64,000 nt of DNA. Source: Narcine bancroftii (lineage: Eukaryota). The notes below the pieces were generated by a model that was given only the letters and a program-made list of their open reading frames with translations, was not told the DNA's origin and made no database searches. Within the stretch, counting starts at the first letter, position 1, and each line of letters opens with the position of its first letter. Location of the stretch: contig NC_091477.1 of assembly GCF_036971445.1 (NCBI RefSeq), positions 3,100,001 to 3,164,000 of the forward strand. Direction: 5' to 3'. The position numbers and the translations under genes were made by a program. This document shows, piece after piece, positions 12,726 to 63,604 of the stretch.

Positions 12726-13409
12726 AAGGATGTTGTGAAGCTGGAGAAGGAGCAGTTGATTTTACCAGGACTGGAAGACTTAAGTGATACAGAGAGGCTT
12801 AGATACAGACACTAAAGTTAGTCAGTCCTAGTGCAGGATTAGTGCAGGTGGGCAGAAGGGTTGGTGTGGACTCAGGAGTAGGGTTGTCCTGGAGATTAAT
12901 TCTGGATGAAGTTGAGGCAATCACAGGATTAGATTAAAACAGAACATTCCAGCATGGTCCAGGCCCTTCAGCCCCTGATGTTGTGCCAGCCCATGTAAAT
13001 CTACTCCACAACAATCTAAATCTTCCCTCCCTCACCCCCATAGCCCTCTACTGTGACTGTCCAAGAGTCTTTTACATGTCCCTATTGTGCCAGTCTCCAG
13101 CAACACCTCTGGCAACGCATTCCAGGCACCCACCATTTTTTTTAAATAAAAGAACCTTGCACCTGGCGTCTCTCCTTTTCTGTCCAAAATCTCTATTTGC
13201 ATGCCTGATCCTCATTCAGCCGCAAACCTATTGATGTCGCTGGACATGGAACGGTAGTTGCCACTCCTACAGACAGATCTCAGAGCCCAAATCCCCACTC
13301 AACCTTTCTGGAACGGTCTCAGCTCAGTTAGTTAGTAGCTTCGCTCGTGTGTTACATGGACTCTGGTGATCTCAGACTTGGCACAGCATGTACAAAAGTG
13401 AGTACAGAA

Positions 13410-13608
13410 TGCACACATGCACGCGGTCTCGCTCACACACACACACACACACACGCGCATGCGGTCTCGCTCACACACACATGCATGGTCTCGCTCACAC
13501 ACATACACACACACGCGTGCGGTCTCGCTCACACACATACACACACGCGCGCGGTCTCGCTCACACACACACACACGGTCTCGCTCACACACACACACAC
13601 ACACACAC
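13410..13608. repeat. Compound (CA)n minisatellite punctuated by ggtctcgct
   Basis: About six units of ggtctcgct(ca)n. Confidence 0.9.
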
Positions 13609-15502: not shown

Positions 15503-15698
15503 NNNNNNNNNNNNNNNNNNNNNNNNNNNNNNNNNNNNNNNNNNNNNNNNNNNNNNNNNNNNNNNNNNNNNNNNNNNNNNNNNNNNNNNNNNNNNNNNNN
15601 NNNNNNNNNNNNNNNNNNNNNNNNNNNNNNNNNNNNNNNNNNNNNNNNNNNNNNNNNNNNNNNNNNNNNNNNNNNNNNNNNNNNNNNNNNNNNNNNNN
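15503..15698. other. Assembly gap (N run)
   Basis: 196 Ns next to simple-repeat sequence. Confidence 1.
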
Positions 15699-15728
15699 TA
15701 AGCATACATGCACTCATGCACACATATA

Positions 15729-15768
<40 letters not shown>

Positions 15769-15906
15769 ACCCCTCCCCTCCTACAAACACTAACGCATTG
15801 TGGTTCACAGGACCCATAACATGCCAAATGTTCACTTTCCACTCAAACATTCCAATTATTTTCATATTCCAAAAGAATTTTAAAAAACAAAATAAAATCC
15901 ACACCA

Positions 15907-15912
15907 TTTATT
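15907..15912 (-). terminator. CD74: Candidate CD74 polyadenylation signal AATAAA
   Basis: tttatt on the plus strand, followed on the minus strand by a GU/U-rich tract. About 1.15 kb past the stop. Confidence 0.5.
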
Positions 15913-17071
15913 GCGAAATAGTATCTCCCAGCAGAAGAGAGCAGTTACTAATCAGAAAATATTAATAAGATCAATCAATATTATTGTTTTAATTAATAAC
16001 AGGCTGAAAACATAATGATAAATAAAGTTATGATGTTAATATTCTTTAAATTGTCCAGTGAAAGAGCATTGGAGAAAATCCTAACGTGTACCCCAATAAC
16101 TGGCTGTAACCAGTGAACCCCACTGAGTGGGAGGGACAGATGATGGGCTAGAGAGAGAAATCACTTCAGATAAAATAATACTCCACGGGAACTGGGTCAG
16201 CTCTCATTGTGCATCCCATATGCCCGTTTGGAGATTGATTTCTCCCATGGGTGTTCCTCATGGTCCCAGTACTGAGTAGATGTTCTGGGATGATGGACCA
16301 AGTTTTAGGAAGTGCGGGTCATGGACAGAAGTGATGGTGTGGGGGCCAGTCGGAGTAACAGCTCCATCAAAGTGACCAGCGCAGAGTTGCCCCTGTCCTC
16401 TGGATGTTGTGCCTTGCCAGGGCTCACCTTCCCCGACTGCAGACCTACGCCCAAGGACACATCTGCATGAGATTACCACCTTAAAACCCAGCCATAAATC
16501 CCTAAAATTTCCACCAATGCTCTTTGTTGGCCTTCAGTTGCTCATCCAAGCGAATTTTACCACAAGCCTTCTAGGAGCTCCCAAAGGATACATTTTCTAC
16601 TCCAAACAAGTCCTTACAGATGACATGGTCATCAAGGATTGATGGGCCGAAAGGCCTGTTTTTGTGCTGCAAAACTCTAATCATCTAAGTAAGGAAAGGA
16701 AATAGATCTGTTCGGTACACATCAGCTGCTAAAAATGAACAATCAAACACAATGTTAATGAAGAATTAATCTTTGCAATTAATGTCTGGGGAGAAAAGCT
16801 GATGAAGATCATCTGTGTCCCCCAACGGTTCATGCTTAATCAATATCTGTGGTAAGAAAAGAAAAAAAATTTGCATCAGTTTTGGAAATATCTCCACATA
16901 CTTGATTCAACAATTCCCTTTTTTTGATGCAGAACTGAATAAATTCCGAATAAGCAATGGGAGAGAGGTTACAGGTGTGGAGCAGGACTACAGAGGGCTC
17001 AGATTCCCTGTGAAATTAGTGCAGAGAGGTCACGAGCTCTACTCTCGCTCTGGCTACGGCCCTTGCTCAGT

Positions 17072-17103
17072 TCAACTCGGGATTCCTTCAGCTTTGGTTT
17101 CCT
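17072..17103 (-). CDS. CD74: CD74 probable terminal exon, coding part (x|AG ETKAEGIPS*)
   Basis: Strong acceptor ctttctatctctccgattccag|. The phase-1 entry matches the upstream donors. The peptide itself is poorly conserved. Confidence 0.55.
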
Positions 17104-17159
17104 CTGGAATCGGAGAGATAGAAAGAGGTGACACATTGATGGGGTGAGGCACAGGCAAT

Positions 17160-17400
17160 GTGGGGAGAGTGGGAGATGGGGGAGAGTGACCATGTGGAGA
17201 GTGTCTATGGGGGAGTGTCTATGGGGGAGTGTCTATGGGGGAGAGTATCTGTGCCGGAGTGTCCATGGGGGAGAGTGACCATGGGGAAGTGAGTCCTTGG
17301 AGAGAGTGTCCGTGGGGGAAGAGTATCTGTAGGGAGAGTGTCTGTGGGGGAGAGTGTCGGTGGGGGACAGTGTCTGTGGGGAGACTGTGACTGGGGAGAA
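17160..17400. repeat. G-rich degenerate minisatellite (ggggagagtgtc..) on the 3' side of the Tg exon
   Basis: Tandem units of about 15-17 bp, same family as 17930-18285. Confidence 0.85.
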
Positions 17401-17562
17401 ATAATCTATTCCCACTGCTCACTACTGTCCCCTACCACAGTAGGCTGAGTCAGTGAATCTGTGAATGCGGGAGCTGCATTTGGGGTTTCAGTAACTCTGT
17501 TGAGGGGCTGTGTAATCGCAGCCTCGGGTTGCAGGTCCTTGGCTCATCTCAATCCCACTTAC

Positions 17563-17790
17563 AGGCTGGTGAATGCAGCTGAAGTCTACTTTCACAATTA
17601 TCCAGGTGGTCACGAGTTGCTGTTCCCTTGACTTCAGTTCCATTGGGGTAGGAGCACCAGCAAAAGCCAGTGCTGGGCCAACATTGCTTGGGCTCAAAGT
17701 TCCCATCCGTATTACAAGAGGGATAGAAACTGCCAGGTTTTCTCTTCACCATTTTCCTCTTCCTCTCACACAGAGTCTCTGCCCTCTGAA
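17563..17790 (-). CDS. CD74: CD74 thyroglobulin type-1 domain exon (p41-type, 6b equivalent)
   Basis: [75 protein letters not shown] has six Cys and the QC..STG.CWC motif. Acceptor cgtgcag|, donor |gtaagt, 228 nt, phase 1-1. Confidence 0.92.
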
Positions 17791-17929
17791 CTGCACGGGG
17801 AAAATAAGGAGGGTGTCACAATGGATCCATTTGTGACTGGGATTCTCTGCTCTGTCCCACCCCCCAAACCTTCAAATGCTCCTTGTTCCAAAATCCACTC
17901 ATTGTGCAGAGATCATCAGGGAGAGTCTT

Positions 17930-18285
17930 TGGGAAGAATGTCCATGAGGGTAGAGTGTCCGTGGGGTGAGTGTCCGTGGGGATAGTGTCCATGAGGGTGG
18001 AGAGTGTCCGTGAGGGGGGAGAGTGTCCATGAGGAGAGAGTGTCATGGGGAGAGTGTCCGTGAGGTGAGTGTCCATGGGAAGAGAATCCGTGGGGAAGAC
18101 AGTGTCCATGGGGAGAGTGTCCGTCGGGGTAGTGTTCATGAGGAGAGTGTCCATGGGGGAGAGTGTGTCCATGGGGAGAGTGTCCATGAGGAGTGTGTCC
18201 ACGGGGAGAGTGTCCGTGGGGAGAGTTTCCGTGGGGAGAGTGTCCGTGGGGAGAGCGTCTGTGGGGAGAGTGTCCATGGGGAGAT
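17930..18285. repeat. G-rich minisatellite (gagagtgtccatggg / gagagtgtccgtggg) on the 5' side of the Tg exon
   Basis: More than 20 tandem units of about 15 bp. Confidence 0.9.
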
Positions 18286-21995: not shown

Positions 21996-22106
21996 TCTTT
22001 ATTCCTGGCATCACTAGGGGCTTTTTGGGTTCTCCAGCTGCCTCGTCCAGTTTTTCCTTGGCTTGCATCATTGGTTGCTTCGCCATGTTGGAGAATAGGT
22101 TTCTCC
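21996..22106 (-). CDS. CD74: Candidate extra CD74 cassette exon (RNLFSNMAKQPMMQAKEKLDEAAGEPKKPLVMPGIK)
   Basis: Acceptor ctttttccaacag|, donor AAGA|gtaact. 111 nt, phase 1-1, open in the CD74 frame, in non-repeat sequence. Confidence 0.6.
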
Positions 22107-44200: not shown

Positions 44201-46487
44201 AAATGGATCGGAGAGGATTGACCGTAGGTCAGTGGGGGTAGGTGGGAGTAAGTGTGCGGGATGGACTGGAAGGGCCAAATTGGCTGGTTTCTATGCTGTA
44301 TATGGTTATATGTGGTTATGGTTAAATCTACTACACATAAGGTGATGTCCCTTAGTTCGAGTCTCTCCCACCGATGGAAACAACTCACCTACCTCTATCA
44401 TATCTACGCCTTTCCTAATTTTATGTTTCTATAAGACACTGGATAGGATAGAAATGAACATAACAATGTACAGTGATGGAAATGTATGGATACAAAACTA
44501 AGGGTGGGAAGAGACTTTGAACAATTTTCCTTTTGTAAATAATTTATGGTGAATAAAGTCTATTTTGGGGTAAAAAAAAAGAACCTGACAATGAGGGAAT
44601 GGAGACTAAACCAGACCCTTGAATCCATGTAGCTGTTGACCATCCCTTTCTCTCCAAGATGCTGAGTTCCTCCAGCAGTCTGCACTTTGCTCTACAATAT
44701 TGTCATCACAGGGTGTTTAAACATAGATTTGTATCAGTTCACCGCACTCAATGTTTGCCAGGTTTAAACTTCCCATTTCATATCTGCAAAACGTTTACAA
44801 TTTTAATAGACAAGATCATGAGATATAAGTACAGAAGTAGGCCAATCGGCCCATCGGGTCTGCCCTACCATTTCATCATGAGCTGATCAACACCACTCCC
44901 CGGCCGGCCTCTCCTCTTAACCCTTGATGCCCTGACTAATCTCTGCCTTAAATACACCCCATGGCCTCACTTCCACGGCTGCCTCCACAGACTCACGACC
45001 CCCTGACGAAAGAAATTTCTCCGTGTCTGTTTTAAATTGAAGCTGTTTTTAAAAAAATATATTCTAATTTGATTTTTCAATCTTAAACAGGAGAGTACAT
45101 CATTGGTTGTTACAGACCACGTCATTTTTATCCTGTGATTTACTTATATATGACGTCTCTTCATCTCCCATTCCCACCCCCCCAACCCTCCCCCCAAGAA
45201 AAGAAAGATAGACATGATATAAAACAGAAAAGTTAGAAAAGGAGAAGAACAAAGAGAAGAAATGAGAGGTTGAATGTGGTGCCACCATTTCCCACATGCG
45301 TCCATGGAGACCATGGATGGATGACCGTTTGTCCTGAAGTTGTGCCCTCTTGTCCTAGACTCCCCGACCATGGGAAACACCCTTGCCTCATCTTCTCCAT
45401 CCAGGCCTTTCAGCATCATGTCTCTACGAGTTCTCACTCATCCTTCTGCACCCCGAGTCCAGTCCAAGAGTCGGCAATCATTCCTCATATGCTAATCCTT
45501 TCATTCCTGGTATCATTCTAGTAAATCTCCTCTGAACTCTCTCCAACACCATCACATCTTTCCTCAAATACGGTGCCCAAAACTGTACCCAGTTCTCCAA
45601 ATGCGGTCTCACCGGTACCCTATATCCCTGCTCTTCTGTGCTATTTTAGAAATGAATGCCAGCATTGTATTCGCCTTTCTCACTGCGAATGCAGTGTCCC
45701 TAACCCCTTGAATGCAAGGCACAAGATTGCAGGCACCAATGAACAGAGCATTTGCCTTCTGCAAACTCTCTCCATCAACAGATACATCAACAAGCATTTA
45801 CAAAGATTACTTTAGATGGGTAGTGGGATATTCTAAAACAGAAATGCCGGAAACACACTTCAGGTGAGGCATCGCCTTTGGGGAGAGAAGAAGTTAAAGG
45901 TTTGGTGAGGTCCGGGAGGAACTCAGCATCTGTGGAGAGAGACACTGCTGATGTTTCATGACGAAGACCCTTCAAGGATGACGAGTGAACAGTCTCAGGG
46001 GTGAAACTGAGAAACACCAGAATTGTGGATGCTCGAGGGAACAACATACACCTGGAGAAGGGATTCGGTATCAAGACTCGATAAGGAGCTCTGACCTGAC
46101 CTGCAGGCTGACCACCTCTCTCCACAGACACTGTTTGACCTCCTGAGTATTTTCTGCTTTTGTTTTAGATTTCCAGCGTCTGCAGGGTTTGTGAGGGTCA
46201 GATGGAGGTCTTGGATCTCCCACACTCCTTTATGGTACATCTCAACTGTGGGATCTGTGTCCTGCCCTGGGTAAAGAGAGGGGCCAGTCTTCTTGAGGTC
46301 AGCACCTCACCTCTGAAATATTCTCCCTCCTCCCCCTCACTGCGAACCCCTCTCCAGATAATCTGCAGCGAGCAGGCTCCGCAGGCTCTTTCCTCAGCTG
46401 TGATAACCAGGTGAACCAGTCCATTTGCCTGGAGCCCGTGACACAGGGAAGCTGAACCTACAGCGGACGGCGTGGCTCGGATCTTAC

Positions 46488-46600
46488 CTCGGGCCGGGGG
46501 CAGGGTTCGAGGGAACCCCCCTGACCTCCACAGCAACATTGCTGGCAACATCCTGCTGTGAGTTACTCAGCAGAGCGTCTTGTTGGTGGTCCATGGACAT
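46488..46600 (-). CDS. CD74: CD74 exon 1 coding part (cytoplasmic tail)
   Basis: MSMDHQQDALLSNSQQDVASNVAVEVRGVPSNPAPGP(R); compare human MDDQRDLISNNEQ. The donor AG|gtaaga is phase 2 and joins exon 2 in frame. Confidence 0.9.
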
Positions 46601-46697
46601 GATGCCCTCTGCGTGGAGTAGCAAGGCGCAGCTGGCTGCAGAGACCAGTGTGCACACTACCACCTAGATACTAACGTAATCTTAAACTCTCCAAACT

Positions 46698-46731
46698 AGG
46701 AAGTTGGCTCCTGGCTTGCTTGGAAAGTCCC
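46698..46731 (-). promoter_or_regulatory. CD74 proximal promoter: NF-kB site and ETS-like site
   Basis: Perfect GGGACTTTCC on the minus strand at 46722-46731 and AGGAAGT at 46698-46704, about 100-130 bp upstream of the ATG. Confidence 0.7.
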
Positions 46732-47009
46732 TACCATACTTAACCACACAGAGTCCACCCTCGAATATAAGCTGCCAGATTGTTCTCAGGATTACACAGC
46801 ACAGGCCCTTCAGCCCAATGTCCATGCTGACCCATATGTTAATCTACTCCAATCGCCTTTACCTGCATTTGGCTCTAAGCATAGGTGCAGGTGAAGGCCA
46901 TTCAGCCCTTCGAGCCTGCACCACCATTCTCCCTCAGTGCCTTTTTCCTGCAGTGACTTCCGATAATTTGATTCCCTTAAAGCTCACAAATAGAATAACA
47001 GAACATTAT

Positions 47010-47445
47010 ATCATAAATAAACAGGACCTTCGGCCCTTCTAAATCAGTGCCAAACCATTTTTTTGGCTGAGTACCACTACCTGCACCCAGTCCATATCCC
47101 TTCATCCATTTTCCTGCCCAAATCCTTCTTAAATGTTAAATTTGAACCCACATTCACTACCTCAGCTGGCAGCTCGTTCCACGCCCCCACCACTCTCTGT
47201 GTCAAGAAGTTCCCCATGAACTTTTCCCCTTTTATCCTTAACCCTTGTCTTCTGGTTTGTATCTCACCCACCCTCAGTGGAAAAAGCCAGTCTCCATTTA
47301 CTGTCTCTACCCCCCCACTCATAATTTTAAATTCCTCTATCAAATCTCCCCTCATTCTTCTACGCTCCAGGGAATACAGTCCTAACCTGTTTAACCTTTC
47401 CCTGTGACTCAGTTCCTGAAGCACGGGCAACAACCTAGTAAATCA
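47010..47445 (-). mobile_element. CR1-type LINE 3' fragment
   Basis: LNRLGLYSLERRRMRGDLIEEFKIM...FLTQRVVGAWNELP. Confidence 0.8.
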
Positions 47446-48537
47446 TGGTCGATGTTTTGTTCCTCTGAACCCCATTCTCCTGCCTTCTCCCCATAACCCC
47501 TGATGACCTCATTAACTGAAAAATCTACCTTCCTCCACTTTAATTCTAACCAGTGATGTGGCTTCCACAGGCACCTGTGGCAATGAACCCCAGAGATTCA
47601 CCACCCCGTGGATGAAGAAACTTCTTATCTCTGCTCTAAAGGGCCATCCTGAGGCTGTGCCCTCTGGTCTTTGACTCTCCCACCATTGGAAACATCTTCT
47701 CCACGTCCACTCATTTCAGCCCTTTCAATATTCAGAAGGTTTCAATGGGATTCCCCCTCCCCACAACCACCTCAACCTTCTAAACTCCAGCAAGTAAGGT
47801 TTACAGAGCCAGAGCGACAAAGGACAAGAGAAGACTTCATGAAGTGTGTAAGATTATGAGGGGCTTAGATGGAGTGGACAGCCATCAGCTGTCTCTCAGG
47901 GCAACAATAGCAAATAGCAGAGGACGTCTGTTTAAGGAGAGGGGAGGATAGTTTAGGGGAGACGTCAGGGGTAAGTTTTTAACACGGAGAGTGGCGGGGG
48001 CCTGGAATGCATGGCTGGGGGTGGTGATGGAGGCTGGAACAATAGAGACATTTATAAAACTCTTTGACAGGCACATGGATGGAAGAAAAATACAGGGCTG
48101 TGGGTGTGAGGGAGAGAAGGGTTAGAATGTTGTGGTGCAGGTTTACATGGGTCAGCACAGCACCGTGGGCTGAAGAGCCTGTGCTGTGCTGGAATGTTCT
48201 GTGAGTACAGGCCCAGAACCATCAAACAATCCTCATAACCAGGAGCTAATCCTGCAAATACCTTCTGTTTCCTATTGCTGATCCAGTTTACCAAGTTGAC
48301 CGAGATCCCAAAACCCCTAACCTTTTGGGTCGAGGACCAGTGTGGGACCTTGTCAAAGGTTGGTCCCATGTAAACCAGTTCTCGTCGATACACCGCTGCT
48401 TCCTCCATGGTTCGCAAGGGTGAAGTCTGCTGTGAGAGCTGTGGTGAGTCTGCGGGACACGCACAAACGCAGCTAATCACCTCTTCATTACAGCCTTGGA
48501 TAGTCCTTCAAAACTGTGTCTCATCTGCAGACCTTTG

Positions 48538-48571
48538 CCTAGCAACCACTGAGTCACCGGTCACAGCCAAT
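48538..48571 (+). promoter_or_regulatory. MHC-II-type X1-X2-Y module 1
   Basis: CCTAGCAAC-cac-TGAGTCA, then 10 nt, then CCAAT. The X1 core and X1-X2 spacing match HLA-DRA CCTAGCAAC-aga-TGCGTCA. Confidence 0.75.
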
Positions 48572-49354
48572 GGCTGCCGCTTGCCCATGGCCCTTGTCTC
48601 AGCCATTGCAGAAGTAAAACCATTCAACCAAGCCCCTGTAGGCTGTCAGCCTTGGCTCGGTTCCAGTACTCGGTTCTCCTCAGTTCGAACGGCTGCAAGC
48701 ACAGGATAGGACCGTGGGTTTATTGGAATCGTGGGGAGAACCACAGAACATTAGAGCACAGAAAAGAACTGTGGCCCTTCTAGTCTGTGCTGAACTATTA
48801 TCCTGCCTCGTCCCACTGACCTGCACTGAGTCCATACCCCTCCATACCCCTCCCATCCAAGTACCTGTCCAAATTCTTCTTAAATGTTAACATTGAGCCC
48901 GTATTCACCATCACAGCTGGCAGCTCGTCCCACGCCCCCACCCCTCAGCAGATTAAATGTTGTCCTTTATATAGCCAACATTTTGGGCTTGAGTCCTTTA
49001 TCAAGGTATGGCGTAGATAGGTCAGCACAACATTGTGGGCTGAAGGGCCGGTACTGAGTTTACATTCCATAAAGGGAGCCGCCATTCTAAACCTTTATTT
49101 GGGTATGGCCCCCACTTGGGAACTGGAAAGGCAGGTCGGTGGAGATGAGCCCATCATCAGATCACCCATGACCACATTGAATGGTAGAGCAGGCTTGACG
49201 GGCCGAATGGCTTCCACCTGCATTTATTTCTTGGGTTCCCTGTGAAGCAGCTAGAATTTAGTTTCTTCCGTCCTTCTCTCCTACCGACTAAAAAAAATTT
49301 AATGATTTCAGCCTGTGACACCCCCACCCCGCACACCCCCTCCCCTCACACACA

Positions 49355-49615
49355 GCACGGTTGGTGTAGCGGTTAACCTCACGCCTTTACAGTGCCAGCG
49401 ATCAGGACCAGGGTTTGAATCCCGCCCTGTCTGTAAGGAGTGTGTACATTCTCCCTGAGACTGCGTGGGTTTTCCCCAGGGGCTCCGGTTTCCTCCCAGT
49501 GTTCAAAATGTACAGGGTGTGTAGGTTAATGGGGTGTGATTTGGGCAGCATGGGCTTGTGGGGCGGAATGGCCTGTTACCATGTTGTGTGTCCAAATTTA
49601 AAAAAATAAATTTAA
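49355..49615 (+). mobile_element. tRNA-derived SINE
   Basis: ggttggtgtagcggtt...gggtttgaatccc A/B boxes; same family as 8150-8385. Confidence 0.75.
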
Positions 49616-50299
49616 ATGTGGTGTGGCCCCCGTTGAGAATGGCTGGTTTATAAGTATAGGGGCTGCATGCAGACAGATGGGACTAGTATGGCCAGTACGG
49701 TGAGTCTGGGCCAAAGGGCCTGTTCCCGTGCTATCAGTATCTGGGACAAACGCTGTGAAAACAGGATACGGATGGAATCAAAGCCCAGAGTCAGCATCTT
49801 CCTGCAGTGAAAACAGAACATGGATCCCAACCCAGCTTTCACATCCACAAGATGTCCCAGTGTGGTCTGTAACATGGTCCACGTGCTTCAGGGGGAAGGG
49901 GCTCATTTCCGAGTCAGTGCAGAGAATGCTGCAACAACAATTTGCATTCATATAGCGCTTTCATCCAGTAAAGGAGAATGGATTAAAGGTGCGGCTTGTA
50001 TACGAAGGAGAGGCCAAGAGGGCGATGGACCCTCAGTCACTGACAATGTTGACAGACTGATAGATTATGTGGACAGTCAGGCCATCAAGGGGCATGGGGT
50101 GAGTGTAGGAAAGTGGTGTGAAGATGGATCAAATGTTCACAGATGGGACTTGAGAGGCTGAATGGCCCCCACTTGTTTCTACTTCCTCGAACTTTCCATT
50201 CTGTGTAGTGAGTTGCAGTGTGGGCGACTTGAAACTGCCCAGGGGAAGGACAGGCTTGGTTTCCTTCCCCAATTCTACAAAGCACAACCAAAGATTCTA

Positions 50300-50331
50300 C
50301 CCAACAACTGATGAATCACACAACAGCCAAT
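50300..50331 (+). promoter_or_regulatory. MHC-II-type X1-X2-Y module 2
   Basis: CCCAACAAC-tga-TGAATCA, then 8 nt, then CCAATCAG. Confidence 0.6.
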
Positions 50332-50520
50332 CAGGACTCCAAACAGGCAATCAGGGCTCCAAACAGGCAATCAGGGCTCCAAACAGCCAATCAGGACTCC
50401 AAACAGGCAATCAGGGCTCCAAACAGTCAATCAGGGCTCCAACAGGCAATCAGGGCTCCAAGCAGCCAATCAGGGCTCCAAACAGCCAATCAGGGCTCCA
50501 AACAGCCAATCAGGGCTCCA
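50321..50520 (+). repeat. 20-bp CCAAT-box minisatellite (aaacagccaatcagggctcc), 10 units
   Basis: Five units keep AGCCAATCAG; the others have GCAAT or TCAAT. Confidence 0.95.
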
Positions 50521-51794
50521 TTGGTTTGCAGTCAGTGCAACACTGTTACAGCACCAGTGACCAGGGTCTGAATCTAGTGCTGTCAGGGAGGAGTTTGTAT
50601 GTTCTCCCGTGTCTGCGAGGGTTTTCCCTGGGGACTCCAGTTTCCTCCCTCCGTTCAAAATGTACCTGGATTGTAGGTCAATAGGGTGTAATTGAGCAGC
50701 ACAAGCTCATGGGCTGGAAGGGCCTGTTACCGCACTGTGGGTCTAAATTAAATATCAAACTGCAGAAAACTTCTTTCCCCTCACACTCTCTCCCATCTCC
50801 ACTCTTCTCAGGACTCCTCCCCATGAAAACATGGATGAACATCTGCTCTCCATAATCTATGGACCCAAACACTCCTTCCAAGCAATTAGATCTCACAGAG
50901 TCGTGCAGCACAGAACAGGCCCTTTGGCCCAACACATTCATGCCAACCCACTGATATTCTGGGCTAGTCCCATTTGCCTCCATTTGATCTATATCCTTAG
51001 AACATAGAACATTCCAGCGCAGTACAGGCTCTTTAGCCCATGACATTGTGCCTTCCTCTATGAACTATAGAACACTACAGCACAGAAAACAGGACATACA
51101 GCCCTTCTAGTCTGTGCCAAAACATCATTCTGCTATTTCCACTGGTCTGCACCAATTCCATAACCTACTCAACAATCTAACCCTTCCCTCCCTCACACCC
51201 ATAACCCTCTATTTTCCTTGCATCCATGTACCTGTCCATACGTGTTTTAAATGTCTCTATTGTACCAGCCTTCAGTACCCATGGCAAGGCATTCAAGGTA
51301 CCCACCATACAAACTGTGTAAAAAACATACCCCTGATATCTCCCCAAACTTCCCTTCCTTCACTTTGTAGATATGCCCTCTGGTGTTTGCTACTCCCACC
51401 CTGGGAGAAAGGAGATGGCTGTTCACCCTATCTCCTCTCAGAATCTTGTAAACCTCTTCTAAACCCTTCCTGTCTGTATGTCTGACCAAATGTCATTTGA
51501 ATGTCTTAATTGTTCCCACTTCTAGTTTCCTCTGGCAATTCATTCCAGATATGGACCACCCTCTGTGTGAAAAGGTTACCCCCGGCCCCTCTTAAATCTC
51601 TCCCCTCTCACCTTCAACCCGTGACCCTCTCGTTATAGAACCATCTACCATGGGGACTGATGGTGCTGGCCCTCCCACAATGGAATGCTCTCCCATCCAC
51701 CACCTTCATGGTGCACTCTCTGCGCACCACACGAGGCCAGTTTATAGAATCTTTTCTTAATTTTCCGAAACCTAAACTCAACCAAGACCCTCTG

Positions 51795-51830
51795 CCCAGC
51801 AACTGGTGAGTCATACAGCAGCCAATCAGG
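51795..51830 (+). promoter_or_regulatory. MHC-II-type X1-X2-Y module 3
   Basis: CCCAGCAAC-tgg-TGAGTCA, then 8 nt, then CCAATCAG. Confidence 0.72.
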
Positions 51831-52327
51831 CTTTAGTGTTGGAGTTCAAAGTCCAATGAATGGAAGTTCAAGTTTATTGTCATTTGATTTGACAACGAAA
51901 CAGGTTTTCCAGTCTTCAGTGTTAACATGCAGACACACAGCCAGATGAACTATACATAGGCAGGACAAGTATTCATCTATGCAAATAAATATTGCTTCAT
52001 GAATATGAGAGTCTGGGAGGGTCAGTGTGAACAATTCCTTTGGTCGTTCAGCGTTCTCACTGCCCATGGGTAGAAGCTGCTCCTCAGCCTGGTGGTGCTG
52101 GCGCTGATACTCCTGGATCTCTTCCCCGACGAGAGCAGCTGAAAGATGCTGTGTGAGGGGTGGAAGGGGTCCTCAATGATTTTGTGCACCCCCTTCAGAC
52201 AACGATCCAGGTCGATCACGTTGATGGAGAAGAGAGAGACTTTCACGTCAACGGGGTTGGGGAGGGAGACTCCAGTGATCCACTCAGTGATCCACTGTTA
52301 AGGTCCTGAGATTGACCTCTGATCCAG

Positions 52328-52946
52328 TGTCAGGCTCCGAATCATGGGTCCTCTACCGGCATCACCTACGGCTCCTAGAACGCTTCCACCAGCGTTGTCT
52401 CCGCTCCATCCTCAACATTCATTGGAGCGACTTCATCCCAAACATCGAAGTACTCGAGATGGCAGAGGCCAACAGCATCGAATCCACGCTGCTGAAGATC
52501 CAACTGCGCTGGGTAGGTCACGTCTCCAGAATGGAGGACCATCGCCTTCCCAAGATCGTGTTATATGGCGAGCTCTCCACTGGCCACTGAGACAGAGGTG
52601 CACCAAAGAAGAGGTACAAGGACTGCCTAAAGAAATCTCTTGGTGCCTGCCACATTGACCACCGCCAGTGGGCTGATATCGCCTCAAACCGTGCATCTTG
52701 GCGCCTCACAGTTTGGCGGGCAGCAACCTCCTTTGAAGAAGACCGCAGAACCCACCTCACTGACAAAAGGCAAAGGAGGAAAAACCCAACGCCCAACCCC
52801 AACCCACCAATTTTCCCCTGCAACCGCTGCAACCGTGTCTGCCTGTCCCGCATCGGACTTGTCAGCCACAAACGAGCCTGCAGCTGACGTGGACTTTTAC
52901 CCCCTCCATAAATCTTCGTCCGCGAAGCCAAGCCAAAGAAGAAGAA
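52328..52946 (+). mobile_element. RTE-clade LINE 3' fragment
   Basis: GSESWVLYRHHLRLLERFHQRCLRSILNIHW...QLRWVGHVSRMEDHRLPKIVLYGEL, a C-terminal zinc finger and a (gaa)n tail. Confidence 0.88.
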
Positions 52947-54294
52947 GGCGCAATAGTGTTAGTGTCAGCAACCAGGGTTCGAATCCCGCGCTGTCTGCAA
53001 GGAGTTTGTACTTTCTCCCCGTGGGTTTTCAACAGTTCTGGTGTACTCCCACCCTTCAAAACTAACGGGGTTGTAGGTTAATTGTGGGGTGGGGCCAAAG
53101 GCTTGTGGGGTAGAAGTTACCGGGCGGTATGTCTGAATTTAAATTTAAAACAATTTGCATTGCAGTGAAGCTGCTTCTCCCAGAGATTAGTGAATGTGGA
53201 ATTCTCTAGAAAAGGATGCAGCCCTCGTGAAATATTTTTAACAGATTTTTGCTTGGCGGGAATTGGGGAAAAGGCAGGTAGGTGGGGGGTATGTCTACGG
53301 GCAGAACCACCCTGATCTTATTTGAAGGAATGTTAGAGCAGGTTGGATGGCAGACTCTTGTTTATAGACGAAAGGGGAACCATGGATGTTCCACCCAAGG
53401 CTTAGAAAATAGTGTGGCTTGATTTTGGGGAAGATGGTGAACTGCAGATGGAATGTGAGTCAACATTTAGAAGCTGGAGGAACTCAGCAGGTGAGGCAGG
53501 TGTCATGGTGGGAAATGGTTGTTTATCACAAAATATACCCGTATATATTCATGGTCGATACCGTGTAATAATCGACTTTCCCCCATATTTTTGGCCCCAA
53601 CTGCTCTCCCATTTGAGCTCCCAATTCCCTGACAGTGGGCTCTCACTCTGCTGCCTGCCCACTCTCAAAGCCCCGAACGTGGACTTACCATCAAGTCCCG
53701 GCTATCCAAGCACCTGATGTCTTGAACGACACAGGTAATTACCAAGGTCAAAAGTCTGACCATCTGAGGAAGGGAACAGACATATGGTTTTGGGCCGAAA
53801 CCCTTAATCAGGAATAGCAACAGCCACGGTTGACGTACAGGCAAAAGGCTGGGGTGGGGGGGGGGTGAAACAGGCTGGCAGGTGATGGGTGAATTGAGCA
53901 GCAGTGGCCGGAGGGCAGAGGAAAATGTCTTCAGGGTCAGCATTCCTCAAAGGGACTTTGCAGCAGAGCAAAACAATGAAGAAGTCTGCAGTGATAGCCA
54001 GACACCCACAGTTCACTGGCATCCTCTACTGGTGAACCATCACCATATCAAGGAGAGACATTACTGAATTCTCAAACATCCGCATTTCCTGCTTCAGGCT
54101 CATTCTGCTTCCTCCTTGAAGGACTCAGGTCCAAAACGTCCACAATAGATCTTTGTCTCCTATAGACGGTGAAAAGACCGTCCAAGTTCCTCCAGCATTT
54201 TCGTGTGTTTTTACTACATCTGCAGTTTTGTGTTTCAGACATCACTCAAATCCACTCTGATGTCAACAACCTACACTTAACATAGCAGCAAAAC

Positions 54295-54720: not shown

Positions 54721-54949
54721 TAGGAGCAGTGCAGCATAAGATGTAGGACTGAGCTTTAGTTCCTTGCTTAAATTCTATGGCAGAGATTGGGGCAGCTCTT
54801 TGGAAGGTCAGTATCCCATCTCAGCTGCCCCCTTAAACCAGATCATTTTTCCTTTCTGGTGTATTTGGTCCATGCTGCCCATCCATACTAATCCCCCTCC
54901 TGCTCCAACAAAAGCAAACTCAGCCTATTCTCACCTCATAACTAAGACC

Positions 54950-56175
54950 CCCCCCAGGCAGCATCCGGTCCAGTACCATAATCCACCCCCAGGCAGCATC
55001 TGATCCAGTACCATGACCCCCCCCCCCCCCCCAGGCAGCATCCTGTCCGGTACCATTACCCCCCCAGACAGCATCCTGTCCAGTACCATGACTCCCCCAG
55101 GCAGTAAGTATCCTGTCCAGTACCATGACCCCCTCAGGCAGTATCCTGTCCAATACCATGACCCCCCCAGGCAGTATCCTGTTCAGTACCATGACCCCCC
55201 CAGGCAGTATCCTGTCCAGTACCATGACCCCCCCCCCCCAGGCAGCATCCTGTCCAGTACCATGACCCCCCCCAGGCAGCATCCTGTCCAGTACCATGAC
55301 CCCCCCCCCCCAGACAGCATCCAGTCCAGTACCATGACCACCCACCCCCCCAGGCAGCATCCAGTCCAGTACCATGACCACCCACCCCCCCAGGCAGCAT
55401 CCTGTCCAGTACCATGACCCCCCCCCCAGGCAGCATCCAGTCCAGTACCATGACCACCCACCCCCCCCAGGCAGCATCCTGTCCAGTACCATGACCACCC
55501 CCCCCAGGCAGCATCCAGCCCAGTACCATGACCACCCACCCCCCCCCAGGCAGCATCCTGTCCAGTACCATGACCACCCCCCCCAGGCAGTATCCTGTCC
55601 AATACCATGACCCCCCCAGGCAGTATCCTGTTCAGTACCATGACCCCCCCCCCCCCCAGGCAGCATCCTGTCCAGTACCATGACCCCCCCCAGGCAGCAT
55701 CCTGTCCAGTACCATGACCCCCCCCCCCCAGACAGCATCCAGTCCAGTACCATGACCACCCACCCCCCCAGGCAGCATCCAGTCCAGTACCATGACCACC
55801 CACCCCCCCAGGCAGCATCCTGTCCAGTACCATGACCCCCCCCCCCAGGCAGCATCCAGTCCAGTACCATGACCACCCACCCCCCCCAGGCAGCATCCAG
55901 TCCAGTACCATGACCACCCCCCCCAGGCAGCATCCAGCCCAGTACCATGACCACCCACCCCCCCCCAGGCAGCATCCTGTCCAGTACCATGACCACCCCC
56001 CCCAGGCAGCATCCGGTCCAGTACCATGACCCCACCCCCAGGCAGCATCCTGTCCAGAACCATGACCCCCCCCCCAGGCAGCATCCTGTCCAGTACCATG
56101 ACCCCCCCCCCAGGCAGCATCCTGTCCAATACCATGACCACCCCCCCCCCCAGGCAGCATCCGGTCCAGTACCAT
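54950..56175. repeat. Minisatellite, unit about 30-37 bp (ccaggcagcatcctgtccagtaccatgac plus C-run)
   Basis: More than 30 tandem units; explains the 433-aa and 330-aa low-complexity ORFs. Confidence 0.96.
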
Positions 56176-57369
56176 ACCTTTCCAGCAGTGTGGTAATCAG
56201 AGCTGCCCACAGCGCTTCCAAGAGTGGTCTAAACAGTGTTTGTCAAGTTGAAACATCCCAGACTATACGATCCTATGGATCGGAGGTCAATCGTATGAAG
56301 AGGGTGTGTAAAATCATTGAGGACCCCTTCCACCCTGCACACAGCATCCTTCAGCTGCTCCCGTCGGGCAAGAGACACAGGAGGATCAGAGCCAGCACCC
56401 CCAGGCTGAGGAACAGCTTCTTCCCACGGGCAGTGAGAATGCTGAATGACCAAAGGAACTGCTCACACTGACCATCAGAGACTCTCATATTCATAAAACA
56501 GTATTTATTTATATTACCCCTCCATAAATCTTCATCCGCAAAGCCAAGCCAAAGATATAGTTAAAATACTTGTCCTGCATATGTATATTTCTCAGTGTGT
56601 GTGTGTCTGCATGTTTTGCACCGAGGACCAGAGAACAGTGTTTCATCAGGTTGTACAGTACGTGTACAGATGACATAAACTTGACTTTTGACGGGTTTCC
56701 ATCCTCAACTTCTTTAGTTCTCGGTGACTGTTGCCTGGCCTGCTTAGTTCCTCCAGTGCAGTTTTACATTCCGAGGTAAGCATGCCCACACCCAAATGGT
56801 GAAGCTGGAAATGAACATTGCAACATAGAAAAATAGGCCCTTCTAGTCTGTGCTGAACTTGATTCTGCCAAGTCCCACTAACTTGCACCCAGTTCATATA
56901 TCTGCCCTAATTTTTCTTGGTGTTAAAATTGAGCCCACATTCACTTCAGCTGGCAGTTCATTTCACACTCCCAGTGTGAAGAAATTCCCCCTACATCTTT
57001 CCACCCTCAGTGAAAAAAGCCCTTTCATTTACTGCCAATTCCCATTATTCTGTATACTCATTATCTTTGCATTTGAAGTTCAGGGATTGTCCCAGAAATC
57101 AGTGCAGAATGTCAGGGTGTTGTACTGAATAAGGATCCTTACACCTGCTGCTCCAGTCTCAGCAACATCACCCCCAGGGATGAACCTCCTGATGCTTCCC
57201 TCTAGAAAGAAACACATTGAATGGGGCGAGCCAGTCCACAGGAGTCACCCTCGACTACCCGAGTGGTCATGGGTGAAAGAGAATTTCAGAGCCTTCACTT
57301 TCTGGGATGTGAAGCCATAGATCTGTTCTGGAGCCTCTACTTTGTGGAAGAGGCAGATGGATGGTCATA

Positions 57370-60662: not shown

Positions 60663-60917
60663 CACGAGAGGATGTGTGTTTAAGGGGATGGGAAATTTTA
60701 AAGGAGATGTTTATGGGAGTGGTGGGTGCCTGGACTGGTTTTTGTGGGGTAGTGGTAGAAGTAGACATAATAGTAGCAATGAAGAGGCTTCTAGAAAGTC
60801 ACATGGGATGCTTATGTTGATGACGTGCAAGCAGTTATAGTCAGCAGATACACCTGAACCTCACTGTACTACATCCCCATTCTCAGTTCAACGTCCGGCA
60901 AGAGGAGCGATGTGAGT

Positions 60918-61050
60918 GGCTGTACGTGACCTAGCGTCCCCATCAACCAGGGAGTTGCTGGATAGACAAGGATAGATGGAAACGTGTTGCTTTCTGCAGG
61001 GGGAACGACACCCTTGGCACGGAGCAGCCAGGGCGTAACTTATCCTGCAC
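60918..61050 (-). ncRNA. SNORA63: H/ACA snoRNA, SNORA63/E3-like, copy A
   Basis: Hairpin tgcagg..cctgca, H box AAAGCA, second hairpin, and ACA 3 nt from the end; 133 nt. Shares GCAGGAT, GCTGCT, TGTCGTTCCCCCTGC, CTAT and GGGACGCT.GGTC blocks with human SNORA63 as recalled. Confidence 0.85.
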
Positions 61051-61053
61051 CTA

Positions 61054-61176
<123 letters not shown>

Positions 61177-61704
61177 TCAAATCCTGCACAGGTACGACCA
61201 ATAATGGGACCTGAGGCATAAACATAATGATGAAAGGATTCAGCAGGTTGAGGGGTCAATATTCTCTTTCTTCACCAACCCTGACACAGATCCAACAAAA
61301 ACAAATGCTGGACAAACTGAGGCTACACACAGGAGACTGTAGACGCTGGAATCCAGAACAACACACGATCTGCTGGAGGAACTCAGCGGGTCAATTATCA
61401 ATCAGCAGTATGGACAATATCTTGGGTTGGAATCCTTATTGAGACAGTCTTAATAAAAGGTTCTGACCCAAATTACTGGCTCTTTTACTCCCACTAATGC
61501 TGCTTGACCTGCTGAGTGTCCCCAGATTCCAGGAGCATCTGTGGAAAAAGTTAGTTAGAAGAACAGACTCTGGTCTGGTTCAAAGATTAACTAGTTCCTC
61601 TCTAACTGAACTCTTCCAGCATGTCAGTTCTTACTTCTCATTCCTGCACCTATGCTGTACATCCCCATTCTCAGTTCAACGTCTGGCAAGAGGAGTGATT
61701 GAGT

Positions 61705-61837
61705 GGCTGTTCGTGACCTAGCGTCCCCATCAACCAGGGAGTTGCTGGATAGACAAGGATAGATGGAAACGTTTTGCTTTCTGCAGGGGGAACGACACCC
61801 TTGGCACAGAGCAGCCAGGGCGTAACTTATCCTGCAC
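61705..61837 (-). ncRNA. SNORA63: H/ACA snoRNA, SNORA63/E3-like, copy B
   Basis: Near-identical to copy A; H and ACA boxes intact. Confidence 0.85.
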
Positions 61838-61875
61838 CTAACCAGGGGGTCCCATCAACTCACCGATCAGATTTA

Positions 61876-62184
<309 letters not shown>

Positions 62185-62559
62185 CTACACCCTTTTGCCA
62201 CACTGGCACCAAGCAGAGGCCACCCACAAAGTGGAGGAACAATTCTGTCTTGGCTGTTTCCAACCAGTATTGGCCTCTAATTTCTGTGAACTGCCTCCCC
62301 TGGTCCCCCTTCCCCTCCTATCATTTTCTGCCCTCTCTCTCATCACCTTGGCTTCTTTCTCTTCTACCCTCCCACCTGCCTCCACTGATTACTTATTATT
62401 GCCAATCTGCAACTCATCACTGGACTCATCACCGACATGGACATACCCCAGACCCTAGTCGTCAGAACTGGGCAGGAAGGAAAACCGTTATGCCTGCTGG
62501 AGATCAACATTCCCAGCATATCGCTGTAGGGCAGTGTCTTGAGTTCCAACATCTAGACA

Positions 62560-63155
62560 CAGGCAGGGCTTGAAAGCACTGATAATCCAGAGGGATCTGG
62601 GGATGGGTCCGGGTTAATAGCTCCTTGAAAGCAGCCATGCAGGTAGAGATAGGTTGGGAAAGGTGTGTGGTGTGCTTGCCTTCACTGGGTGGGGCATCAA
62701 ATACATTGTTGCTCTACAACACTTGGGTGAGGGTACACGTGGAATACTGTGTCCAATTCTGACTGCCCCATTACAGGAGGGAATGTGGAGGCTTTTAAAG
62801 CCACAGGAGAGATTTACCAGAGTGTGGGAAGAGCTGATGGAGATTAATAAAATTACAAAGCACTTGACAGGACAAGTATCACCCATGGGAGGATATACAT
62901 TAAGGGGAGGGGGAAGTTTAAGGGAGATGTGTGGGGAAAATATTTTACGATGTGGTGGGTGTCAGGAATGAGTTACCAGGGGTAGTGGTGGAAGCAGATA
63001 TAACTGGAGCGTTGAAGAGACATTTAGATAGAAATATGAAGGGGATGAAGGAATATCCAACAGGTGCAAGCATCAGTCTACGTTTGATTTGGGCATGTTC
63101 AGCGGACACAAGGATTGATTAGCCTGCTTTTGTGCTATAAAGTTCCAGGTTCTAT
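62560..63155 (+). mobile_element. Highly degenerate CR1-type LINE fragment in an RPS14 intron
   Basis: Residual RDLG, QERFTRV and WNELP-like sequence with a CR1 tail. Confidence 0.6.
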
Positions 63156-63294
63156 AGTGAGGACTATAGGCAGGATATTGGCCTGCCCCAGGGAGAGCAG
63201 CCAGCACAGGCCAGTCATTTTACTTCTCATTCCTGCACCTGTGCCGTACATCCCCGTACTCCTTTCAACATCTGGCAAGGGGAGAGATTTGAGT

Positions 63295-63427
63295 GGTTGT
63301 ACGTGACCTAGCGTCCCCATCAACCAGAGAGTCGCTGGATAGACAAGGATAGATGGAAACGTATTGCTTTCTGCAGGGGGAACGACACCCTTGGCACGGA
63401 GCAGCCAGGGCGTAACTTATCCTGCAC
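63295..63427 (-). ncRNA. SNORA63: H/ACA snoRNA, SNORA63/E3-like, copy C
   Basis: Near-identical to copies A and B; H and ACA boxes intact. Confidence 0.85.
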
Positions 63428-63504
63428 CTAACCAGGGGTCCCACCAACTCACCAATCAGATTTAAAGCTTAATTTTTTTTTAAACTAGAAATTAAACCAC
63501 CAAC

Positions 63505-63604
63505 CGACTGGAGTCGATGGGCTGATGAGGAGGAAACGAGTTCCTTTCTGCAGGGGGAACGACAACCGCAGCACTGAGCAGCCGGGGTGCAACTAATCCT
63601 GCAC
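63505..63604 (-). pseudogene. Diverged, 3'-truncated SNORA63-like copy D
   Basis: Keeps the 5' hairpin (tgcaggattagttg..tgtcgttccccctgca) and H box AAAGGA, but lacks the GGGACGCT and ACA end. Confidence 0.7.

What the first reader, a model, noticed from the sequence alone, without database searches (positions are those of the whole stretch)
48538..51830. Three X1-X2-Y enhancer modules upstream of CD74 with a non-canonical Y geometry
Seen: three motifs in short unique islands between transposons, about 1.9, 3.7 and 5.2 kb upstream of the ATG. They are CCTAGCAACcacTGAGTCA-N10-CCAAT, CCCAACAACtgaTGAATCA-N8-CCAAT and CCCAGCAACtggTGAGTCA-N8-CCAAT. All point away from the gene, all have CAG before CCAAT, and all have a short AGA(C/T)(C/T) plus pyrimidine stretch before X1. 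Established: MHC class II genes and CD74 are co-regulated by RFX (X1), CREB/ATF (X2), NF-Y (Y) and CIITA; in HLA-DRA the Y box reads ATTGG about 18 nt after X2. Here Y is inverted and about one helical turn closer, and X2 is AP-1-like. No X box was seen in the proximal promoter, which has kB and ETS sites. Inference: a distal multi-module CIITA-type control region with an alternative architecture in an early-diverging jawed-vertebrate lineage.
Basis: partly seen in the sequence, partly recalled or inferred. Interest (0 to 1): 0.8.

Follow-up and report, generated by a model that had tools for sequence, protein, structure and literature searches.

The report
Ray CD74 upstream X-X2-Y enhancer modules
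Three near-identical 45-base clusters of binding sites for the factors that switch on MHC class II genes lie 1.9 to 5.1 kb upstream of the invariant-chain gene (CD74) of an electric ray. Their CCAAT box is flipped and about ten bases closer than in every described mammalian module, so they are probably real enhancers of a known kind in a new layout, though no binding was tested.

Summary
The window is from Narcine bancroftii. CD74 lies on the minus strand (ATG at 46600, RNA 5' end near 46675), with RPS14 upstream as in human.

CCYARCAAC-N3-TGARTCA occurs three times (48538, 50300, 51795, all on the plus strand) against 0.01 expected. With CCAAT 8-10 nt further on, there are 3 hits against 0.00 expected. 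No module with the canonical geometry exists in the 64 kb.

Similarity between the copies stops at the edges of the 40-57 bp module. The flanks do not align.

Modules 1 and 2 sit in islands that are single-copy by contig depth, while neighbouring transposons reach 10^4-10^6. Two other species hold those islands as about 86-90% identical single-copy contigs. The modules are therefore not part of a dispersed repeat. Module 3's island is less clean.

RNA contigs cover exon 1 heavily and the islands hardly at all, so the modules are distal elements, not promoters.

X1, the X1-X2 spacing and the pyrimidine tract match the published SXY module. Y orientation, X2-Y distance and distance from the start site do not.

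Verdict: a probable CIITA-type distal control region and a new variant of a known kind. The scan has noted other SXY modules near MHC genes of this genome.

The parts
48528..48576 (+). Module 1: AGACC + pyrimidine tract, X1 CCTAGCAAC (48538-48546), X2 TGAGTCA (48550-48556), N10, Y CAGCCAATGG (CCAAT 48567-48571)
   Evidence: The island 48204-48736 has no in-window repeat similarity. Contig depth is 2-25 in DNA runs, against 1e4-1e6 for flanking repeats. It is covered by single-copy contigs of two other species: X7 record 18 at 48410-48765 and X8 record 27 at 48208-48635.
50280..50336 (+). Module 2: CAACCAAAGATTCTA lead, X1 CCCAACAAC (50300-50308), X2 TGAATCA (50312-50318), N8, Y CAGCCAATCAGG (CCAAT 50327-50331)
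   Evidence: There is a 57-bp, 79% match to module 3, E 2e-9, and nothing else shared. The island 49618-50320 is single-copy by depth. It is covered by X7 record 21 (50101-50334) and X8 record 28 (50219-50405).
51774..51833 (+). Module 3: CAACCAAGACCCTCTG lead, X1 CCCAGCAAC (51795-51803), X2 TGAGTCA (51807-51813), N8, Y CAGCCAATCAGG (CCAAT 51822-51826)
   Evidence: There is no in-window repeat similarity across 51458-51915. The 51600-51799 bin has depth of about 2600 in X7 and X8, so part of this island is repetitive. No long orthologous contig was listed for it.
50322..50520 (+). 20-bp minisatellite (10 units, consensus AACAGCCAATCAGGGCTCCA) grown out of the Y box of module 2. It holds five intact CAGCCAATCAG boxes and five GGCAATCAG or GTCAATCAG variants.
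   Evidence: It is also present, one unit longer, in the organism D contig X8 record 28.
46487..46679 (-). CD74 exon 1: coding 46600-46487, 5' UTR up to about 46672-46679
   Evidence: tblastn of P0014 is 100% over residues 1-38. RNA contig depth is about 29000 over exon 1, falls to 312 at 46665-46671 and to 0 at 46680.
46698..46731 (-). Core promoter sites: NF-kB GGGACTTTCC (46731-46722) and ETS ACTTCCT (46704-46698). No X or Y box.
   Evidence: Covered by the orthologous contig X7 record 16 (46480-46911).
49940..50188 (-). Octamer ATGCAAAT (49947-49940) and PU.1-type ETS GAGGAAGT (50188-50181), in the same unique island as module 2
   Evidence: Each is expected fewer than 0.05 times in a 700-bp island. 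Function untested.

Best explanation
The three modules are distal cis-regulatory elements of the ray CD74 gene, of the MHC 'SXY enhanceosome' type. The inferred mechanism is as follows. An RFX complex binds the X1 half-site CCYARCAAC with its 5' pyrimidine tract. A bZIP dimer (AP-1 or CREB/ATF) binds the TRE-like X2 exactly 3 nt downstream. NF-Y binds the high-quality CAGCCAAT(C/G)(A/G)G box 8-10 nt further on. The three together form a platform for a CIITA-type co-activator, which acts over 1.9-5.1 kb on a short kB/ETS core promoter. This resembles the way the distal S'-Y' module acts at -2.3 kb on HLA-DRA. Transposon insertions account for about 1.4 of the 1.9 kb between the start site and module 1, and have pushed the modules away from the promoter. 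Modules 2 and 3, and probably module 1, descend from one ancestral module by local duplication. What is shown: the motifs, their non-random occurrence, similarity restricted to the binding-site core, single-copy status, orthology of islands 1 and 2 in relatives, their distal position, and the identity and expression of the gene. What is inferred: every protein-DNA contact and the dependence on CIITA.
For: There are 3 hits against 0.01 and 0.00 expected, none elsewhere in 64 kb. Identity between copies is 7-9 of 10 inside the module and at background (2-3 of 10) outside it. The only significant island-to-island alignment is the module itself, as expected if only the binding sites are constrained. 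Islands 1 and 2 have contig depth of 1-45 where repeats have 1e4-1e6, and are held as single-copy contigs about 86-90% identical in two other species. The target gene is CD74 and is highly expressed in the RNA run. The X1 sequence, the 3-nt X1-X2 spacing and the 5' pyrimidine tract match the published module (PMC2278383 figure 6 legend; PMC7866136). Distal SXY enhancers are established (PMC2677874, PMC4243378). Human CIITA-bound sites show X-Y spacers from 0 to 42 bp, and functional ones fall in whole helical turns (PMC4381081). CIITA and NLRC5 orthologues exist in an elasmobranch (PMC8455134). Unchecked scan notes report SXY-type modules near the MHC IIA, IIB and class I genes of the same genome.
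Against: The Y box has the opposite orientation and lies 8-10 nt from X2 rather than about 18-22 nt. In mammals, order, orientation and spacing are described as fixed and needed for function (PMC7866136, PMC4374748, PMC4381081). The 8 and 10 nt spacers are not in the same helical phase. An S box at the canonical 16 bp could not be established. Module 2 has weakened X1 (AACAAC) and X2 (TGAATCA). No chromatin, binding or reporter data exist. Cross-species contigs are uniformly about 87% identical, so they show orthology and not selective constraint on the motifs. The per-base differences inside the motifs were not listed. Module 3's island is partly repetitive by depth.
Confidence: 0.6

Rival explanations
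1. These are generic AP-1/NF-Y enhancers. The TRE and the CCAAT box are the working parts, bound by Fos/Jun and NF-Y. The X1-like sequence is incidental or binds another RFX family member, and CIITA is not involved.
For: X2 is a perfect TRE (TGAGTCA) in two modules. AP-1 and CCAAT sites with a precise spacing co-occur in FOS/NF-Y-bound regions in human (PMC4889920). The X2-Y geometry does not fit the CIITA enhanceosome.
Against: CCYARCAAC is kept in all three copies with exactly 3 nt to X2, together with the 5' pyrimidine tract, which is the signature of MHC X boxes (PMC2278383). The location upstream of CD74 is what the RFX/CIITA model predicts.
Confidence: 0.15
2. These are non-functional relics: three copies of a short segment spread by local duplication or carried by an old low-copy repeat. 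They look like an X-X2-Y module but are not under selection.
For: There are three copies in the same orientation within 3.3 kb. Modules 2 and 3 share 57 bp at 79%. Module 2 is fused to a minisatellite built from its own Y box. In human, AP-1/CCAAT composites occur in LTRs (PMC4889920). Module 3's island shows raised depth.
Against: If the copies were neutral, flanks and core should have decayed alike, yet similarity ends at the edges of the binding sites. Islands 1 and 2 are single-copy by depth and orthologous in two other species. The match to a 19-nt functional consensus next to its expected target gene would be a coincidence.
Confidence: 0.17
3. These are promoters of transcripts running away from CD74 on the plus strand. 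In the canonical order S-X-Y-TSS, the modules point towards higher coordinates.
For: All three have the X-to-Y direction pointing away from CD74. A scan note on another SXY module of this genome reported a non-coding RNA starting beside it.
Against: The RNA run has depth 0 over 49800-50399 and about 1.5 over 48400-48599, against about 29000 on CD74 exon 1. No joint links the islands to an exon. No coding ORF follows the modules.
Confidence: 0.05

Closest known systems
Mammalian MHC class II / CD74 S-X-X2-Y (SXY) enhanceosome module bound by RFX5-RFXAP-RFXANK, CREB/ATF1, NF-Y and CIITA
   Same: It has an X1 box with a 5' pyrimidine tract, a bZIP site 3 nt after X1, a strong NF-Y box on the same side of X2, and association with CD74.
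   Different: Y reads CCAAT (not ATTGG) on the X strand and lies 8-10 nt (not about 18-22 nt) from X2. X2 is TRE-type. An S box is not established. The modules lie 1.9-5.1 kb from the start site and point away from the gene, while human CD74 has a promoter-proximal module (PMC2677874). There are three copies.
Distal S'-Y' enhancer of HLA-DRA (-2.3 kb) and other distal RFX/CIITA-bound SXY modules of the human MHC II region
   Same: These are kilobase-distal composite modules that act with a proximal promoter and bind the same enhanceosome (PMC2677874; PMC4243378, citing Krawczyk 2004).
   Different: The human distal modules accompany a proximal SXY module and keep the canonical internal geometry. 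The ray promoter has no proximal module, and the internal geometry differs.
Non-MHC CIITA-bound XY boxes with variable spacers (Scharer et al. 2015, PMC4381081)
   Same: The X-Y spacer departs from the 47-49 bp MHC II standard. Spacers of 0-42 bp are bound by CIITA in vivo.
   Different: In human, most such sites recruit CIITA without regulating the gene. In the ray, the non-standard geometry is the only one present at a core antigen-presentation gene.
AP-1 + CCAAT composites with fixed spacing in human LTR repeats (PMC4889920)
   Same: A TRE and a CCAAT box at a short, fixed distance.
   Different: Those lie in high-copy LTRs and lack an X1 box. The ray modules 1 and 2 are single-copy and carry X1.

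Membership tests
SXY (W/S-X1-X2-Y) MHC enhanceosome module | X1 box: RFX half-site RGYAAC preceded by a pyrimidine-rich stretch | tested here: met
   AGCAAC in modules 1 and 3, and AACAAC (5 of 6) in module 2, each preceded by CCTTTGCCT, TTCTACCC or CCCTCTGCCC. The py tract is described in the PMC2278383 figure 6 legend. Sequence level only.
SXY (W/S-X1-X2-Y) MHC enhanceosome module | X2 box: a CRE/TRE-like bZIP site immediately 3' of X1 at fixed spacing | tested here: met
   TGAGTCA, TGAATCA and TGAGTCA lie exactly 3 nt after CAAC in all three. They are TRE-type, not CRE-type.
SXY (W/S-X1-X2-Y) MHC enhanceosome module | Y box: an NF-Y site present downstream of X2 | tested here: met
   CAGCCAATGG, CAGCCAATCAGG and CAGCCAATCAGG. 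Only 16 sites of the form RRCCAAT[CG]R exist in 64 kb, 5 of them in the minisatellite.
SXY (W/S-X1-X2-Y) MHC enhanceosome module | Y box is an inverted CCAAT (ATTGG on the strand that reads X1-X2) | tested here: not met
   CCAAT is on the X strand in all three. There is no ATTGG 14-24 nt after any X2 in the window. The canonical orientation is stated in PMC7866136.
SXY (W/S-X1-X2-Y) MHC enhanceosome module | X-Y spacing fixed: about 18-22 nt from X2 to Y, giving an XY box of 47-49 bp | tested here: not met
   The spacers are 10, 8 and 8 nt, against 20-22 bp (PMC4374748) and a 47-49 bp total (PMC4381081).
SXY (W/S-X1-X2-Y) MHC enhanceosome module | S/W box about 16 bp upstream of X | tested here: inconclusive
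   Modules 2 and 3 share CAACCAA(A)GA 5-7 nt upstream of X1. Modules 1 and 3 share about 50% identity from -60 to -1, including TTCAAAAC/TCCGAAAC at -31 to -24. No motif common to all three lies at -16. No S-box model was available to score.
SXY (W/S-X1-X2-Y) MHC enhanceosome module | Promoter-proximal position (within about 300 bp of the start site), pointing to the gene | tested here: not met
   The modules lie 1.87, 3.63 and 5.12 kb from the RNA 5' end near 46675 and point away from it. Distal modules are, however, a recognised subclass (PMC2677874, PMC4243378).
SXY (W/S-X1-X2-Y) MHC enhanceosome module | Occupied by RFX, CREB/ATF, NF-Y and CIITA, with activity dependent on RFX and CIITA | not testable with these tools
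   No ChIP, ATAC or reporter data were available. Only the presence of CIITA and NLRC5 orthologues in an elasmobranch is documented (PMC8455134).
Dispersed repeat / transposon-borne motif | Many genomic copies, with homology extending beyond the motif | tested here: not met
   There is no in-window similarity outside the module. Contig depth is 1-45 at modules 1 and 2, against 1e4-1e6 for repeats. Module 3 is less clear, at about 2600 in its bin. The short motif itself could not be counted genome-wide.

The most novel reading that the evidence does not exclude
In this ray, and perhaps in cartilaginous fishes generally, CD74 is driven by an RFX/bZIP/NF-Y/CIITA enhanceosome whose NF-Y is flipped and sits roughly one helical turn closer to X2. 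That would mean the rigid order, orientation and spacing rule of the mammalian SXY module is a derived state and not an ancestral requirement of CIITA recruitment.
Probability: 0.3. Interest if true: 0.7.

Novelty: new variant of a known kind. Interest (0 to 1): 0.5.

Why it matters
The SXY enhanceosome is a textbook case of stereospecific transcription-factor assembly, but nearly all data come from placental mammals. A cartilaginous fish in which the only X-X2-Y modules at a core antigen-presentation gene have a flipped, closer Y box raises two questions. The first is whether RFX/NF-Y cooperativity and CIITA docking tolerate another geometry. The second is which geometry is ancestral. Both can be tested by flipping or moving the Y box in reporter constructs and by comparing CD74 and MHC II loci across sharks, rays and chimaeras. 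If the modules prove inactive, the case would show that close look-alikes of composite elements can persist without function.

Tried and rejected
- **Cross-species loci.** Their upstream regions could not be fetched, so no motif-level conservation test was possible.
- **Read laying (single call, 28).** It showed orthologous contigs over modules 1 and 2, but the table of differing letters was cut (812 rows not shown). Substitutions inside the motifs are unknown.
- **Chance.** Rejected by shuffles.
- **Hidden upstream 5' UTR exon that would make module 1 a proximal promoter.** Rejected, because RNA contigs end near 46675 and no joint reaches exon 1 from upstream.
- **Dispersed repeat.** Rejected for modules 1 and 2.
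- **Additional modules in intron 1 or elsewhere, as in the mammalian intronic Ii enhancer.** None found. The hit at 22064-22079 lies inside a coding exon.
- **Canonical-geometry module.** None found.
- **S box.** No convincing common motif at the canonical distance.
- **Literature on SXY geometry in fishes or sharks.** Nothing found. The primary spacing papers (PMC359998, PMC86081) are not held.
- **NF-Y footprint relative to CCAAT.** Not documented in the paper consulted, so no claim is made that the flipped NF-Y covers the same DNA interval.
- **Scan notes.** They gave titles only, with no geometry for the other SXY modules.
Full report
**What is there**

- The pattern CCYARCAACNNNTGARTCA has three matches in the 64-kb window, at 48538, 50300 and 51795. 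All are on the plus strand. Shuffles give 0.01 expected.
- Adding the CCAAT box 8-10 nt after X2 still gives those three matches, against 0.00 expected.
- Looser scans find no further X1-X2 pair in non-coding sequence. They find no X1-X2 pair followed by ATTGG at 14-24 nt.
- Each CCAAT is preceded by CAG and has good NF-Y flanks: CAGCCAATGG once and CAGCCAATCAGG twice.
- Each X1 is preceded by AGACC or AGATT and a pyrimidine run.

**The gene and the species**

- Exon 2 matches Pfam PF09307 (CLIP, MHC2-interacting) at E 4e-15.
- A word search with a skate CD74 returned CD74 proteins of 13 elasmobranch species.
- The NCBI protein of Narcine bancroftii (P0014) matches the window's exons at 97-100%. 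The window is therefore from the lesser electric ray.
- CD74 runs on the minus strand. Exon 1 spans 46600 to 46487, exon 2 spans 38070 to 37864, the CLIP exon lies near 36968-36888, and the thyroglobulin exon spans 17791 to 17564.
- A scan note places RPS14 at 60870-63604, the same neighbour as in human by my own knowledge.

**Are the modules really distal?**

One RNA-type run of the same species (X6) was laid on 46400-52399.
- Contig depth is about 29000 on exon 1. It drops to about 312 at 46665-46671 and to zero by 46680. The transcript therefore begins near 46672-46679, and there is no sign of an upstream non-coding exon.
- The island around module 2 has depth 0, and the one around module 1 about 1.5.
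- The modules are thus 1.87, 3.63 and 5.12 kb upstream of the start. In that sample they are not promoters of abundant RNAs.
- These are contigs, so start sites and strand cannot be fixed exactly.

**The proximal promoter**

The promoter is short. It has a perfect NF-kB site GGGACTTTCC (46731-46722), an ETS core ACTTCCT (46704-46698) and no X or Y box. Repeat-derived sequence begins at about 46795.

**Is it a dispersed repeat?**

- A self-comparison of the window shows that 35% of it is repeated within itself. The modules lie in three stretches with no such similarity: 48204-48736, 49618-50320 and 51458-51915.
- In DNA contigs of four runs, the bins holding modules 1 and 2 have summed depths of 1-45. 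The flanking SINE and other repeat bins reach 10^4 to 2.5x10^6.
- Two runs labelled as other organisms (C and D) hold single contigs over module 1 (X7 at 48410-48765; X8 at 48208-48635) and module 2 (X7 at 50101-50334; X8 at 50219-50405). Their depth equals that of their own CD74 exon-1 contigs, about 25 and 9.
- Those contigs carry about 9-14% differing letters. These islands are therefore orthologous single-copy DNA in related species.
- Module 3 is less clean. Its bin has depth of about 2600 in those runs, and no long orthologous piece was listed.
- The whole unique region is alignable at similar identity. This shows orthology, not selective constraint. The table of differing letters was cut, so I cannot say whether the motifs themselves are unchanged.

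**Relationship between the three copies**

- Anchored on X1, identity is 7-9 of 10 within the module and 2-3 of 10 (background) on both sides.
- A sensitive island-against-island comparison finds only the module. Islands 2 and 3 share 57 bp at 79% (E 2e-9), and islands 1 and 3 share 41 bp at 73%.
- Modules 2 and 3 are therefore copies of one another, and module 1 is probably a more distant copy.
- Similarity that survives only over the binding sites is what constraint on those sites would produce. It is hard to reconcile with neutral relics.
- The three are not independent inventions of the geometry.
- The Y box of module 2 has been amplified into a 20-bp minisatellite of ten units. The relative labelled D also has it, one unit longer.

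**Comparison with the known module**

Published descriptions agree on the following.
- S lies about 16 bp and Y about 20-22 bp from the X box (PMC4374748).
- Human MHC II XY boxes span 47-49 bp. CIITA-regulated genes keep spacings in whole helical turns, while merely CIITA-bound sites have spacers from 0 to 42 bp (PMC4381081).
- A pyrimidine-rich stretch precedes X (PMC2278383).
- Human CD74 has a promoter-proximal module, and HLA-DRA has an additional distal one at -2.3 kb (PMC2677874). Further distal modules exist in the MHC II region (PMC4243378).

Against this, the ray modules compare as follows.

| Feature | Ray modules | Status |
|---|---|---|
| X1 box | RFX half-site present | met |
| Pyrimidine tract 5' of X1 | present in all three | met |
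| X1-X2 spacing | 3 nt in all three | met |
| NF-Y site downstream of X2 | present, good flanks | met |
| Y orientation | CCAAT, not ATTGG, on the X strand | not met |
| X2-Y distance | 8-10 nt, not about 18-22 | not met |
| Position | 1.9-5.1 kb from the start, not proximal | not met |
| S box | no common motif at the canonical distance | undecided |

X2 is a consensus AP-1 site in two modules.

However, 8 and 10 nt are not the same phase, so 'exactly one turn' should not be pressed.

CIITA and NLRC5 orthologues are reported in the whale shark (PMC8455134), so the trans-acting side plausibly exists.

**Most likely mechanism**

RFX, a bZIP dimer and NF-Y bind side by side on each module. They recruit a CIITA-type co-activator that acts at a distance on the kB/ETS core promoter.

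About 1.4 of the 1.9 kb between the start site and module 1 is repeat-derived by depth. The ancestral module probably lay within a few hundred bases of the promoter and was displaced by insertions.

The island of module 2 also carries an octamer and a PU.1-type ETS site, which would suit a B-cell or myeloid enhancer. Every binding step here is inferred.

I put this reading at 0.6. The rivals are:
- a CIITA-independent AP-1/NF-Y enhancer (0.15);
- non-functional duplicated relics (0.17);
- promoters of divergent transcripts (0.05).

**What could not be done**

The CD74 loci of other elasmobranchs could not be fetched, although their proteins were in hand.
- No tool gives access to the rest of this genome, so enrichment near MHC genes could not be computed.
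- Unchecked notes of this scan report SXY-type modules near the MHC IIA, IIB and class I genes of the same genome. One of them was followed up and judged not to be chance. They give no geometry and are leads only.
- No paper describing SXY geometry in cartilaginous or bony fishes was found.

**Verdict**

These are very probably real, single-copy, gene-associated composite elements of the SXY kind with a consistent non-canonical Y arrangement. That they work through RFX, NF-Y and CIITA, and that the arrangement is a lineage-wide architecture, remains to be shown. Novelty: a new variant of a known kind. Interest: 0.5.

Noticed in passing
window 50322-50526: The 20-bp CCAAT minisatellite ends in an oppositely oriented box (AACCAATGG on the minus strand, which reads ATTGG at 50518-50522 on the plus strand), immediately before a SINE copy. 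The array is present, one unit longer, in a contig of another species (X8 record 28).
   Followed up: partly
window 49353-49617, 50531-50755, 52965-53149: Three copies of the same SINE-like repeat (shared stretch ...CCAGGGTTYGAATCC...TCTCCC...GGTTTCCTCCC) flank the module islands. They have contig depths up to 2.5 million in the DNA runs of four organisms, so the family is shared across these species.
   Followed up: partly
window 46800-48400: About 1.4 kb of high-depth repeat sequence separates the 125-bp core promoter from module 1. Without it, module 1 would lie roughly 450 bp from the transcription start.
   Followed up: partly
window 22113-21997 (minus strand): The exon that another scan note flagged as a candidate extra CD74 exon is part of the NCBI-annotated N. 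bancroftii CD74 isoform (P0014 residues 192-230, 97% identity).
   Followed up: partly
window 54946-56176: A large C-rich minisatellite (40/78-bp period, at least 28 units; consensus contains CAGGCAGCATCCTGTCCAGTACCATGA) lies in the CD74-RPS14 intergenic region.
   Followed up: no
window 52300-52900: A LINE-like reverse-transcriptase tail with a long open frame on the plus strand. Its 5' part (52200-52399) has contig depth above 200000 in X5 and in the same-species RNA-type run X6, but only about 13000-18000 in the runs of organisms C and D. This suggests a lineage-specific, recently active family.
   Followed up: no
window 15503-15698: An assembly gap or masked run of 196 N inside the CD74 gene. 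It was left untouched.
   Followed up: no
window 46722-46731: A perfect GGGACTTTCC NF-kB site lies about 50 bp upstream of the CD74 RNA 5' end. By my own knowledge it is reminiscent of the kB elements of mammalian invariant-chain promoters. It is covered by an orthologous contig of another species (X7 record 16).
   Followed up: partly
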